A stretch of 63,663 nucleotides of DNA, counting the filler, from Hyphochytrium catenoides (taxonomy: Eukaryota; Protista; Hyphochytriomycota): the NCBI GenBank assembly GCA_900088475.1. It is 6 parts of 6 records of this genome, joined end to end, with 100 filler letters (N's around TTAATTAATTAA, not from the genome) between each part and the next. Parts side by side here need not be neighbours in the genome. Positions count along the whole stretch, not along the records: positions 58,645 to 63,663 come from FLMG01004029.1; 5 more parts are not named here. One strand, given 5' to 3'. Numbering within the stretch: the stretch's first letter is position 1; every line of letters starts with the position of its first letter. Positions 58,645-63,663 of this stretch are shown here, piece by piece. Made by a program: the position numbers and the translations under genes. The notes below the pieces were generated by a model. That model searched no databases. It saw nothing but the letters and a program-made list of their open reading frames with translations, and was not told the origin of the DNA.

Positions 58645-58810
58645 ATGTTGTCAATGGCGAGGTAGGTGTGCTGCAGCATCTGACAATCGAACGGCGTTGA
58701 GCCCGTGTTCTCAGCGCTTAGAACAGTGTGAAGCCGATCCTCTGCAGTAGTGTAGGGCAGGAGAGGCCAAAGAAGGATGGTGTCGTCAAGAGTGAGGGGA
58801 CAAAGAGAGG

Positions 58811-58841
<31 letters not shown>

Positions 58842-58842
58842 T

Positions 58843-58893
<51 letters not shown>

Positions 58894-59007
58894 AGAAAGA
58901 GAGAGAGGAGAGAGAGAAGACGGACGGGATGGAGAAGAGTAGCAAGACAGAAAACGCTGCTACAAAAGGAACCGGGAAGAGGTGGGCATCGCTACCGCTC
59001 TTATCTC

Positions 59008-59045
<38 letters not shown>

Positions 59046-59975
59046 TACTCTTTGTGCCCTTCCCATTCACTTTTTCGCTTACCCTCAAGGCGGACAGTGA
59101 GCCGCAAGGAGAAGACATGCGGCCAAACTTTTAGAGTAACCTCAGAGCTTCGCAGGACTAAGGTCGCGACAGCTCCTGAAGAGCTGGTCGAAGACTCTTC
59201 CACTTCCCACCTAGGAAAGAGAAAACGAGGGTGAAGGGGGGCCGGAAGAGAGGGAGAGAGAGAGAGAGAGAGAAAGCAGGAGAATGTTTGTGTTAAGGGA
59301 GGCACAGAGGGAGATGGAGGGAGAGACAGAAAGAAGACCAGTGACTGACAAAAAGGAAATGGTTGAGAGAGGATGGGCAAAAGAGACCAGAAAAAAAGGT
59401 GAAATGGGCACGAGCAAGATTATTTAGCCAGCAGGGAGAGAGACATAAAAAGAGAAGAGAGCAGTGAACAGAGAGGAGGGAAAAGGCGGAAGGAGGGATG
59501 GAATCCAAGCAGAATGAAAACAGTGTGAGGCAAGTACGAGAGGTACAACGAGATAGCCAGAAAGAGGAAGTGAGCCACAGAAAGATGGATGACAAAGAGA
59601 AGACGGAAAAGAGACACACACACACACACACAGAGAAAGAGAGAGAGAGAGAGAGGGAGAGAGAGCGAGGATGCCACACATGCTGTTTCTTGCAAACCCA
59701 TGCTGAGGAAGAGGGCCAGGTCCAAACTGGGGGAAGACGAGAGGAATTCCTCCTCTAATGGCCTTCTTTCCATCGAGGATTGCCTTGCTGGAGACGCGGA
59801 GGATCTCTCTCCCCTTTTTCGTTGTGAAAGAGAGGAGAGTGGCCCCGAAGAGAGAGAGAGAAGCGCAGGCGCCGCTGGGATGAGAAAGAGAGAGGAGCGC
59901 GAGGCCGCTGGAGTGAGTGAGTGAGTTGACCTCCGGCTCAGGAGGGAGTCGTCTGCCTGAACCGTGTGGGTCCAT
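58645..59975 (-). CDS. D-hexose-6-phosphate mutarotase / glucose-6-phosphate 1-epimerase (aldose 1-epimerase family); 3' end lost in the gap
   Basis: FGATLLSF, SSKAILDGKKAIRGGIPLVFPQFG, QHGFARNS / W / WPHVF / ENTG..PF...LQHTY, across three exons. Confidence 0.9.
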
Positions 59976-60100
59976 TATCGTTTCTCGTTTTCTCTCTCTC
60001 TCTTCTCTAGCCGCCCTGTCAGTAGACGGAATGTTGCAGAATGATGAGAACCCAGGACTATAGTTCCTGCCTTTCTCCTGCCAAAACTCAGCGTGCCCAT

Positions 60101-60159
<59 letters not shown>

Positions 60160-60968
60160 CACCTCTTCTTTCTCTCTTTTCTCCATTTCTCTCTCCCGCT
60201 GCTAGAAGTGCACATTGGCTGACTGAAGAAAGAACACGGCTGTGTTGATGTGAAGGACAAAAGAAAGAAACTCTGGGGGAGAGAGAGAGAGAGAGAGAGA
60301 CAGGAGCAATGAGACAGAGTGAGGGTAAGAAAGGGGAGCAAAAGGGAGAGAGAGAGAGAGCCAGAGAAAATCGGATCCTTCTCGTTAACGGCTCTGCATC
60401 AGAATCCTTTCCCAATGGCCGTTACTCATCATACACTATTATTATTATTGCATCTGAAATATAAAGTGCATGAATTTAACTCAGACGCCACGAGAATAGT
60501 GCTTCAGGTATAGAGGGATACACGGCTGCGTCACGAAAGTTAGATATACTGGCCTAAAGTAAGACGTACATGCCAAAAGCGTAAGGCCGACATCAACAGG
60601 GAGAGAGAGAGAGAGAGAGAAAACGAGAGAGAGAGAGAGAAAACGAGAGAGAGAGAGAGAAAAAGAGAGGGAGAGAGAGAGTCACGGACAACGAGAGAGA
60701 AGAGATACATTTTCCACTGGAGGTGAGACAGAAAGGAGAAAGACTCGTTGACGGAGGGCTGTTGAAGACGAAGCTCTAAAGTGGCTGGGCATATACATTA
60801 CTTTTTTCTAAGGAGGAAGCATTTTGGGCGCTTAGCATTCAGAGTCGAAGCTAGAGACAGAGAGAGGCAAAGAGGGAGAGCGAGAGAGAGAGCGAGAGAG
60901 AGAGCGAGAGAGAGCGAGAGAGAGAGAGAGAGAGAGNNNNNNNNNNNNNNNNNNNNNNNNNNNNNNNN

Positions 60969-61617
60969 TGAGAGAGCAAGCTCATAGTCAACCATGGTAA
61001 AGCTGTCAGTTCCCTTGCCTAGCTCCCTTCTTTCTCTCTCCCGGTATCCTCTTCTCTTGTACAGTCTGACCGCACTCTCCATAGCACTCAAAGTACTGAG
61101 GACAATCCGCTTGTACCCACAAAGAGAAGAGAACTCTTCCACTGTCCGACAGAGAAATTCACCGATGCCTTGCCCTTGGAAGCGAGGAGAGACAGCCATT
61201 CGACAGAGCTCTACCTCTTCTCCATCTAACCTCTCTCTTGCCGCTATACAGCCTTCTCGTTCATGAGAGAGAGAGAGAGAGAGAGACAGAGAGAGAGTTA
61301 GTAAAGATTTTAAGGAAATTCATGAAAGAGCATCAAAGGTGATCAGCAAGGGTTGATCTAAGGTGAGTCGTGAAGGAAGATAAGCCAACAAAGCAGAGAA
61401 TGCGAAAGAGATATGCTGTTCCAAGGTTTATTGGGAAGTTCGGAAAAAGGAGCACAGGAGAGCAGATGGGAAGAGAGAGGGAAGAGAGAGAGACAGAGAA
61501 AGGGGAGGAGGCAGAGAAAGAGAGAGACCGAATATTGACGGGAGCTAAGCGAGAAAAGAGGGATAAACGTAGAGCAAATAAGGGAAAAGGATCGAGAAAG
61601 AGAGAGAAAGAGCGAGC

Positions 61618-61656
<39 letters not shown>

Positions 61657-61873
61657 GCGAGGACATTGAAGTACAGCAATTGTGAAAGGGCAAGTTGGAG
61701 CCCATAACGGAAGGAGGTCGAATAAAGAGGGAACAAGAGTCTATCACCTATCACTTCTCCATCCAGCTCAAGCACCCAGAAGCAGCTCCCTCTCTTCGCC
61801 AAGTAGAGCCTAAATGTCACGGAGAGACAATGAGGAAATGATGGTTAGCGAGAAGATGGCTTCTGGATGGAAA

Positions 61874-61918
<45 letters not shown>

Positions 61919-63663
61919 CACCGTAGAGTAGAAAGCAGAGTAGAGAGAGAAAGTGAGACTGAGCTAGGAGAAAAGAGTTGCCTCCACGCCGACGGAACAA
62001 AGAGAAAGAGTGTGGTCGAATGGTAGATCAAGCAACAGGCGCAGGTGAGAGAACCTGGGCGCATGTGAAAGTGAGAGAGAGAGACCACTGGGAGGAGAGG
62101 AAAAGAAGAGAGACAGACAGCACTCACTCTTCTATTCTGGAGAGTTCTCTCTTGATGATCGTCTTCACGAACTTCTCTATATATCTTGGCAAGAATGCCT
62201 CATGCGCGGAACGATAGAGAGAAATGACTCTCTCTTTATCCGACGTTATGTAGGGACGGAGAACAGCTTCCCTTGCTATCTCTTTCGTCTCGTCTCCCTC
62301 ATCTCTCCTGTCTTCTCTCACTGCAAAAGTGCAGGCCCTGGGGAAGAAGAAGGAAGAGGCCACGTTCTCTCCTCTCTCAGCTTCCCGAAGCTTGTTCATC
62401 ATACTTCTTTGCAGCCTTTGAAGAGGAACCGTTTTCATAGTCTCTCTTGACTCCTTTTCTCTCCTTTCCTTCAGTTCGCCCAGCTTAAAGCCACCTACTA
62501 AGGCGTAGTGCTGATGGAACAGAAGAAGGTCCGCGTGCTCATCAAAGAGCTCCAGCTTTGCTATTCTGTCGGACAAAGAGAAAGAGACACAAGAGGAGAG
62601 AAGTTTTCGCGAAAAGAGAGAGAGATTTTAGCTGCCAGGCTAAGAGAGATGTTTAGACTTCAGCATGGAGTCCGATCATCAAAAGAAAGAGCAGATGGGT
62701 AAGCAAAGAGTCTCGCCTAGGACTGGAGAGAGACACGGTGAGAGAGTGAGAACAGACTTCTTATACCTCTCTCTCTCCTCTCTCCCTCCATACGCTCGAT
62801 GCCAGCCGTTCATATCCATAGCAAACTCCTGCTCCCATCCTCTCTCTTGGAACCTCCTTTTCAAGCTCTTCAGGTCGCCATAGACAGAGGAAGAGAGAAG
62901 CGCGCTCTCTTTTCCTCTCTCTTCAAAATAGCGGAGTAGATGCTTGCCATAGAGCGTAGAGAAGTTGGTAGGTTCATACGCGAGGAAGACAGAGGAAGAG
63001 AAGGTGGATGATGCCCATTCCAAGAGTGAGTCCCCATCTTCCGGACTCATATAAGCCTAAAGAGAGGCAAGGAACGAGAAAGAGAGTAAGAGAGAGAGAG
63101 CGAAGACGTGGAGGGGAGAGAGGGAATGAGGGACAGATAGAGGAGAGGTCAGCAAGACGGTGTGTGTGTGTGTGAGAGAGAGAGAGAGAAAGAGAGAGAC
63201 GGAGACAGACAGAGAGAGAAAGAGAGAGAGAGACGGAGACAGACAGAGAGAGAGAGAGAAAGAGAGAGTGAGAGAGAGAGAGAGATGAGAGTGGCGACAA
63301 GCAGCAGGATGTGATAAATCCAGTGCCAGAGCCAGTGAGAAAAAGAGAAAGACAGAGAAGCGCCGCCGAGACCCAGGCATAAATAAAATAGCCCCACAGC
63401 AGGGTAGGAGGAAAGTAAAGAGTCATAAAAAAGAGAGAGAGAAAGAGAGAGTGAGAAGACACCTATCCAGGGAAGAAGAGGGGTGTAGACACGAAACGAG
63501 AAAGAAAGTCATGTGTGGAGAAGGATTGCCATGCAACAAGACTATGGGGTTCCCATACCAGGACACATTCGGCAAGAAAAAAGGTGGGGAGAGAAGGGTC
63601 CACCCGCAGCTCTTTCAACAGCTTCTCTCCTAGACTCGAGACCTCAGAGAGGTCACATCCCAC
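60969..63663 (-). CDS. Leucine carboxyl methyltransferase (LCM) domain fused to a C-terminal GNAT acetyltransferase; 5' end outside the window
   Basis: Exons 63663-63559, 63056-62767, 62565-62128, 61809-61748, 61252-~60969, all phase-consistent. LCM motifs: PTFFLAECVLAYM, FLAYE, LELFDEHADLLLFHQHY. GNAT motifs: VLRPY..SD, FWVLELDGEVIGC, ELCRMAVSPRFQGQGIG, AVRLYKRRGY. Confidence 0.85.

What the first reader, a model, noticed from the sequence alone, without database searches (positions are those of the whole stretch)
60969..63663. Leucine carboxyl methyltransferase–GNAT acetyltransferase fusion
Seen: the end of the LCM domain (LELFDEHADLLLFHQHY) and the start of the GNAT domain (VLRPYITSDKERVISLY) lie in one uninterrupted exon (62565-62128), so the fusion is not a splice-prediction artefact. 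The acetyl-CoA motif A (RFQGQGIG) is intact. Established: LCMT1/Ppm1 is a stand-alone PP2A methyltransferase, and LCMT2/TYW4 carries a Kelch domain. I do not know of a characterised LCM-GNAT fusion. Inference: a bifunctional SAM- and acetyl-CoA-dependent enzyme that could methylate a carboxyl and acetylate an amine on one substrate. That would parallel TYW4 capping both groups of the wybutosine side chain, or it could act on a protein or small molecule.
Basis: partly seen in the sequence, partly recalled or inferred. Interest (0 to 1): 0.7.

Follow-up and report, generated by a model that had tools for sequence, protein, structure and literature searches.

The report
LCMT1 methyltransferase fused to GNAT acetyltransferase
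An intron-rich eukaryotic gene appears to join a PP2A-type leucine carboxyl methyltransferase to a C-terminal GNAT acetyltransferase in one protein; this domain pairing was already listed in oomycete genomes in 2016 but has never been studied biochemically.

Summary
The sequence facts hold. On the minus strand I rebuilt five exons with canonical GT..AG introns and matching phases. Exons A and B align colinearly to human LCMT1 residues 168-201 and 203-283. Exon E is a clear GNAT C-terminal half (Pfam Acetyltransf_1, E 3.6e-12) with motif A intact. Exon D aligns to the strands just before it in a bacterial GNAT. No profile search recognises either peptide by itself, so calling them "LCM end" and "GNAT start" rests on position and length. 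The LCM part resembles LCMT1 far more than TYW4, so the wybutosine parallel is not supported. The architecture is not new. Wang et al. 2016 (PMC5112689) list LCM + Acetyltransf_1 proteins (PifHAT1/PITG_11234 and homologues, 396-652 aa) across oomycetes, uncharacterised. The N-terminal half of the methyltransferase lies outside the piece, and the stop codon is hidden by an N gap. Verdict: probably a real fusion gene, a new member of an already annotated but unstudied architecture. Modest interest.

The parts
63559..63663 (-). Exon A (cut by the piece's edge): LCMT1 core strand ending ...AECVL
   Evidence: Pfam LCM profile 140-171/187, E 0.006. Human LCMT1 168-201, E 0.008, and the only family hit.
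63057..63558 (-). Intron A/B, GTATGG...TTTAG, 79% pyrimidine, (CT)n arrays
62767..63056 (-). Exon B: LCMT1 region corresponding to human residues 203-283
   Evidence: phmmer against PDB: 3iei_A LCMT1 E 9.9e-9; 2zw9 TYW4 E 0.48. The junction with exon A falls at human 201|202.
62566..62766 (-). Intron B/C, GTATAA...GACAG; split codon AG|A = Arg
62487..62565 (-). Exon C, head: inferred last helices of the LCMT1 domain (…LELFDEH…HQHYALVGG)
   Evidence: By position only. No PDB or Pfam hit by itself.
62265..62486 (-). Exon C, middle: 74-residue charged linker (18 K/R, 16 D/E), no family match
   Evidence: No relative among 1.84 billion representative proteins.
62128..62264 (-). Exon C, tail: inferred GNAT beta1-alpha1-alpha2 (VLRPYITSD…SRIE)
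   Evidence: Right length and position ahead of exon D. Not significant against Pfam or against a 17-sequence GNAT HMM.
61810..62127 (-). Intron C/D, GTGAGT...TTTAG; split codon GA|G = Glu; if the intron is retained the frame stops at once
61748..61809 (-). Exon D: GNAT beta2-beta3 (…CFWVLELDGEVI)
   Evidence: Aligns to residues 45-63 of a 156-aa bacterial GNAT (L001), directly ahead of the exon E match.
61253..61747 (-). Intron D/E, GTGATA...GAGAAG; split codon G|GC = Gly
60969..61252 (-). Exon E: GNAT beta4 to beta6/7 with motif A (RFQGQGIG) and the LY..RGY motif; runs into the N gap
   Evidence: Pfam Acetyltransf_1 E 3.6e-12, Acetyltransf_7 8e-11, Acetyltransf_10 3.6e-10. PDB 8iym E 3e-7. 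45% identity to the L001 GNAT.
60937..60968 (.). 32-N assembly gap hiding the last few codons and the stop codon

Best explanation
One gene on the minus strand encodes an LCMT1/Ppm1-type leucine carboxyl methyltransferase. Its C-terminus continues through a ~74-residue charged, probably flexible linker into a complete GNAT acetyltransferase domain. It has the same N-LCM / C-Acetyltransf_1 layout already annotated across oomycetes ('novel HAT family I', PifHAT1). Shown: the exon structure, the LCMT1-like and GNAT identities of the flanking exons, the single open exon between them, and the intact CoA-binding motif A. Inferred: the methyltransferase module docks on a PP2A-family catalytic subunit and methylates its C-terminal leucine, as LCMT1 does. 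Also inferred: the tethered GNAT module binds acetyl-CoA and acetylates an amine on the same complex or a nearby partner, so one protein couples SAM- and acetyl-CoA-dependent marks.
For: Exon A aligns to human LCMT1 168-201 and exon B to 203-283, colinear across the splice site. All four introns are GT..AG, and every phase is compatible. Exon C is open for 166 codons, reached by 0 of 2000 shuffles, and is exon-like in composition throughout. Exon E is a GNAT above Pfam's threshold, with motif A. Exons D and E map to adjacent stretches (45-63 and 74-128) of a stand-alone bacterial GNAT. That leaves about 44 N-terminal residues to be supplied, the size of exon C's tail. The LCM + AT_1 architecture is conserved in most oomycetes surveyed, with full-length models of about 490-540 aa (PMC5112689). 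In the P. infestans member, the matching ME.A..LY...GY.E stretch lies about 35 residues from the C-terminus. In our gene the same stretch lies 38 residues from the N gap (read by eye).
Against: Exon C itself matches no family, so the claim that both domain ends lie in one exon is positional. An AlphaFold model of exon C alone was uninformative (pLDDT 50). The SAM-binding N-terminal half of the methyltransferase is outside the piece and the stop codon is in an N gap. No relative of the junction exon was found among 1.84 billion representatives. I could not fetch the oomycete proteins, so orthology to them is untested. The substrate and activity of either module are untested.
Confidence: 0.6

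Rival explanations
1. Gene-model or assembly artefact. The LCMT1 gene ends in exon C with a lineage-specific tail. Exons D and E belong to a separate GNAT gene or were brought next to it by misassembly in the (CT)n-rich introns.
For: Every intron carries (CT)n microsatellites that can mislead short-read assembly, and the scaffold has an N gap. Exon C's tail shows no significant GNAT similarity. If intron C/D is retained the frame stops immediately. There are no transcript data.
Against: Sequence is contiguous from 60969 to 63663. The C/D junction is GTGAGT...TTTAG with compatible phase. Without exon C's tail, the GNAT would lack its first ~45 residues and any start codon, since exon D opens on an acceptor site and has no ATG. 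The same fusion exists in oomycetes.
Confidence: 0.15
2. The fusion is real, but the GNAT module is a non-catalytic acetyl-CoA or ligand sensor, or a pseudo-enzyme, that regulates the methyltransferase rather than acetylating a substrate.
For: Only the cofactor-binding motif A and the motif-B tyrosine can be read. The acceptor-binding N-terminal arm is highly divergent, with no family match. From established knowledge: yeast Ppm1-dependent PP2A methylation is known to report SAM levels, so a second metabolite input is conceivable.
Against: The motif A and LY..RGY residues are those of active GNATs, and the closest relatives are ordinary stand-alone enzymes. Nothing points to loss of catalysis.
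Confidence: 0.12
3. One reading: a TYW4-like tRNA-modifying enzyme in which the GNAT caps the amino group of the wybutosine side chain while the LCM domain methylates the carboxyl.
For: TYW4 is an LCM-family enzyme acting on both groups (established knowledge). The Pythium member of the oomycete family was auto-annotated 'similar to LCMT2'.
Against: Exon B scores 38.6 bits with human LCMT1 against 13.9 with yeast TYW4, and exon A hits LCMT1 only. There is no Kelch/propeller domain. As far as I know, no N-acetylated wybutosine derivative has been described.
Confidence: 0.05

Closest known systems
Oomycete 'novel HAT family I' (PifHAT1 = PITG_11234/D0NGI2; PsoHAT1 G4YW24; PyuHAT1 K3X9P2; SpaHAT1 A0A067CPD4; Wang et al. 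2016, PMC5112689)
   Same: N-terminal LCM (PF04072) followed by C-terminal Acetyltransf_1 (PF00583) in one multi-exon gene. The GNAT lies at the extreme C-terminus. A short stretch around the LY..GY motif looks alike.
   Different: Orthology was not tested because the sequences could not be fetched. Our gene has long pyrimidine-rich introns unlike typical oomycete genes, so the host is probably another lineage. The oomycete proteins were called histone acetyltransferases on domain content alone.
LCMT1 / yeast Ppm1 (PP2A C-terminal leucine carboxyl methyltransferase; PDB 3iei, 3p71)
   Same: Colinear similarity over human residues 168-283 (…AECVL|.YM.PE…).
   Different: LCMT1 is a stand-alone ~334-aa enzyme. 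Here a linker and a GNAT domain follow. The N-terminal SAM-binding half was not seen.
LCMT2 / TYW4 (PDB 2zw9)
   Same: Same LCM superfamily, and also a two-domain protein.
   Different: TYW4 carries a Kelch-type C-terminal domain and acts on tRNA-Phe. Similarity here is marginal (E 0.48).
Stand-alone bacterial GNAT N-acetyltransferases (e.g. Chitinophagaceae MAG protein L001:3185-3652; PDB 8iym, 2ae6; RimI-like profiles)
   Same: 45% identity over the motif A-motif B core; same length from beta2 to the C-terminus.
   Different: These are about 156-aa single-domain proteins. Their N-terminal arm is not recognisably similar to exon C's tail.

Membership tests
LCMT1/Ppm1 | Sequence colinear with LCMT1 and closer to it than to LCMT2/TYW4 | tested here: met
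   Exons A and B align to human LCMT1 168-201 and 203-283 (E 0.008 and 1e-8). TYW4 scores E 0.48 for exon B and gives no hit for exon A.
LCMT1/Ppm1 | Pfam LCM (PF04072) above the gathering score | tested here: inconclusive
   16.8 bits against a cut-off of 22.3, but only 35 residues of the model's span lie inside the piece.
LCMT1/Ppm1 | Class I SAM-binding motifs in the N-terminal half | not testable with these tools
   That part of the gene lies beyond the piece's edge at 63663.
LCMT1/Ppm1 | Methylates the C-terminal leucine of PP2A-family catalytic subunits | not testable with these tools
   Needs a biochemical assay.
GNAT superfamily | Pfam Acetyltransf_1 above the gathering score | tested here: met
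   47 bits against 20.7, E 3.6e-12, profile positions 51-116.
GNAT superfamily | Motif A, Q/R-x-x-G-x-G/A, for the CoA pyrophosphate | tested here: met
   RFQGQGIG read directly; aligned to the same motif in 8iym, 2ae6 and L001.
GNAT superfamily | Complete fold including the N-terminal beta1-alpha1-alpha2 arm | tested here: inconclusive
Exon D maps to beta2-beta3. Exon C's tail has the right length but no significant similarity.
Oomycete LCM-AT_1 fusion family | LCM N-terminal and Acetyltransf_1 C-terminal in one polypeptide | tested here: met
   Phase-consistent five-exon model; architecture as described in PMC5112689.
Oomycete LCM-AT_1 fusion family | Sequence orthology of both domains | not tested
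   The proteins (396-652 aa) are outside the length range reachable with exon-sized queries. Only a 15-residue stretch from a qPCR amplicon was compared by eye (8 identical).
LCMT2/TYW4 | C-terminal Kelch/beta-propeller domain | tested here: not met
   The C-terminal exons are GNAT, and no Kelch hit appeared in any exon.
Histone acetyltransferase (the name used for the oomycete family) | Acts on histones; chromatin-targeting domains | not tested
   No chromatin-related domain was seen in the exons scanned. The name rests on domain content only.

The most novel reading that the evidence does not exclude
The LCMT1-GNAT protein is the organism's PP2A methyltransferase, and its tethered GNAT acetylates, or reads acetyl-CoA for, the same phosphatase complex. 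PP2A assembly would then be set jointly by SAM and acetyl-CoA levels. This would be an undescribed mode of PP2A regulation shared by oomycetes and at least one other protist lineage.
Probability: 0.1. Interest if true: 0.7.

Novelty: new member of a known kind. Interest (0 to 1): 0.35.

Why it matters
LCMT1 controls which regulatory subunits join PP2A, and in yeast it links SAM supply to growth control. A conserved fusion to an acetyl-CoA-using domain would point to a functional link between the two central acyl/methyl donors at one signalling hub. It would also name a candidate substrate class for an orphan GNAT. As it stands, the architecture has been annotated since 2016 and has no biochemistry. 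This locus adds a probable extra lineage, not a new principle.

Tried and rejected
- HMMER search of exon C against 1.84 billion representatives gave one hit, a spurious tandem-repeat protein.
- Word-based homologue search with exon E found no candidates.
- The ESM Atlas returned only LCMT1-like and generic GNAT fragments, with no fused clusters.
- A metagenome scan with exon B found nothing. With exon E it found only bacterial GNATs.
- Synteny route: the neighbouring epimerase's best relatives (52-70% identity) sit in unrelated gene neighbourhoods with no LCM gene.
- The first 26 residues of exon C against PDB, and its tail against Pfam, gave nothing.
- An HMM of 17 Bacteroidota GNATs scored about 0 bits against exon C's tail.
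- AlphaFold of exon C alone gave pLDDT 50 and was not used.
- The spliced protein was never joined. All searches were exon by exon by reference, so no whole-protein Pfam scan, fold or full-length homologue search was run.
- The third homologous-protein search was left unused. No stop-free reference longer than 173 aa exists, and the known fusions (396 aa or more) are out of its length range.
- The organism could not be identified.

Full report
**What is in the sequence.**
The piece 58645-63663 is eukaryotic, and both genes seen in it run on the minus strand. Reading that strand and the ORF list, I derived a five-exon model for the finding:
- A: 63663 (piece edge) to 63559
- B: 63056-62767
- C: 62565-62128
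- D: 61809-61748
- E: 61252-60969, where a 32-N gap (60937-60968) begins

All four introns are GT..AG. The phase bookkeeping closes without adjustment, and the three split codons read Arg, Glu and Gly. Exons are 46-61% purine on the sense strand. Introns are only 21-33% purine and each carries (CT)n arrays.

**The methyltransferase part.**
- Exon A matches Pfam LCM positions 140-171 of 187 (E 0.006). This is below threshold because only 35 residues are available.
- Exon A also matches human LCMT1 residues 168-201.
- Exon B matches human LCMT1 203-283 at E 1e-8.
- The A/B splice site therefore falls between human residues 201 and 202, an independent check of that junction.
- Yeast TYW4/LCMT2 scores only E 0.48 with exon B and does not match exon A.
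- The N-terminal SAM-binding half lies beyond the piece's edge.

**The acetyltransferase part.**
- Exon E scores 47 bits with Acetyltransf_1 (E 3.6e-12, profile 51-116) and also hits Acetyltransf_7 and Acetyltransf_10.
- It matches ordinary stand-alone GNATs in the PDB (8iym, E 3e-7) and generic NCBIfam GNAT models.
- Motif A (RFQGQGIG) and the LY..RGY motif can be read directly.
- A metagenome scan returned a 156-aa bacterial GNAT (L001:3185-3652, also found in a Chitinophagaceae MAG).
- Exon E aligns to its residues 74-128 at 45% identity, and exon D to residues 45-63.
- That supports the D/E junction and leaves about 44 N-terminal residues to be supplied upstream.

**The junction exon.**
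- Exon C is open for 166 codons, which 0 of 2000 shuffles reach. It is exon-like in composition over its whole length.
- It holds the peptide ending ...HQHYALVGG, then a 74-residue charged linker (18 K/R, 16 D/E), then 45 residues beginning VLRPYITSD.
- Neither end is recognised by any profile or PDB search by itself.
- The tail scores about 0 bits against an HMM built from 17 bacterial relatives of exon E.
- A single-sequence AlphaFold model was too poor to use.
- The statement that both domain ends lie in one exon therefore rests on length and colinearity. Human LCMT1 has about 50 residues after the end of the exon B alignment. A GNAT needs about 45 residues before exon D. Exon D starts on an acceptor site and has no start codon.
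- I rate this as good but not proven, hence "partly confirmed".
No whole-protein scan, fold or full-length search was made.

**Is it known?**
- The junction exon has no relative among 1.84 billion representative proteins; the single hit was a spurious repeat protein.
- Word-based, Atlas and metagenome searches gave nothing useful.
- The literature search did find a precedent. Wang et al. 2016 (PMC5112689) describe three "novel HAT families" in oomycetes.
- In the first of these, PifHAT1 and its homologues carry an N-terminal LCM (PF04072) and an Acetyltransf_1 domain.
- Their table lists these members:
  - PITG_11234 / D0NGI2, 396 aa
  - G4YW24, 403 aa
  - K3X9P2, 490 aa, auto-annotated "similar to LCMT2"
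  - A0A067CPD4, 507 aa
  - M4C3X1, 536 aa
  - a 652-aa P. ramorum model
- All are multi-exon genes. The roughly 500-aa members fit an LCMT1-sized domain plus a GNAT.
- The published qPCR amplicon of PifHAT1 translates to a stretch that shares 8 of 15 residues with our ME.A..LY...GY.E segment. It lies about 35 residues from that protein's end. Ours lies 38 residues from the N gap (by eye). This is a hint, not a test.
- No paper I could find characterises any member.
- Toxoplasma LCMT1 (TGGT1_237570) runs at 54 kDa with a 3xHA tag (PMC10269777). That is probably too small to include a GNAT, so the fusion is not universal among protists.

**How it probably works.**
- Shown: one gene model in which an LCMT1-like module is followed by a GNAT with an intact cofactor site.
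- Inferred: the first module methylates the C-terminal leucine of a PP2A-family catalytic subunit.
- Inferred: the second module, held on a flexible linker, acetylates an amine on the same complex or a nearby partner. Alternatively, it binds acetyl-CoA as a regulatory input.
- The "histone acetyltransferase" label in the oomycete paper rests on domain content only.

**Rivals.**
- A model or assembly artefact is possible. The introns are microsatellite-rich, there are no RNA data, and the frame stops at once if intron C/D is retained.
- Several points count against an artefact: the canonical phase-compatible junction, the GNAT exons' lack of their own start, and the oomycete precedent.
- A GTAGGT hexamer in phase 0 sits exactly after ...HQHYAL (62498-62493). 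It could serve as an alternative donor giving an LCMT1-only isoform. This needs RNA data.

**Verdict.**
This is probably a real LCMT1-GNAT fusion gene (about 0.6-0.75). It is best filed as a further member of an architecture already annotated in oomycetes but never studied. The host organism is unidentified. The neighbouring glucose-6-phosphate 1-epimerase gene has no relative closer than about 70% identity, and its relatives show no shared gene order. Interest is modest. It would rise if the GNAT proved to act on PP2A.

Noticed in passing
window 58645-59975 (minus strand): Downstream same-strand gene for a glucose-6-phosphate 1-epimerase (aldose 1-epimerase family). The ATG is at 59975, with exons 59975-59680, 59210-59083 and 58741-58645 (cut by the edge). 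Pfam PF01263 E 1.6e-15. The best database relatives are only 52-70% identical, mostly unnamed environmental eukaryotes and early-diverging fungi.
   Followed up: partly
window 58645-63663, all introns and intergenic DNA: Strong strand asymmetry. Non-coding DNA is 67-79% pyrimidine on the sense strand, with (CT)n/(GA)n microsatellites in every intron (20 TRF rows). Exons are 46-61% purine. This separates exons from introns by eye, but it is a risk for short-read assembly.
   Followed up: partly
window 62493-62498 (minus strand): A GTAGGT hexamer in phase 0 directly after the inferred end of the LCMT1 domain (…HQHYAL). It is a possible alternative splice donor that would yield a methyltransferase without the GNAT.
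   Followed up: no
window 60937-60968: A 32-N assembly gap starts right after …MVDYELALS, within a few residues of where comparable GNATs end. The stop codon and 3' end of the gene are therefore unseen.
   Followed up: no
L001 2699-3655: The closest stand-alone GNAT found (156 aa, Chitinophagaceae MAG) sits immediately downstream of a 158-aa ORF on the same strand that looks like a small winged-helix (MarR-like) regulator. The regulator call is by eye only.
   Followed up: no
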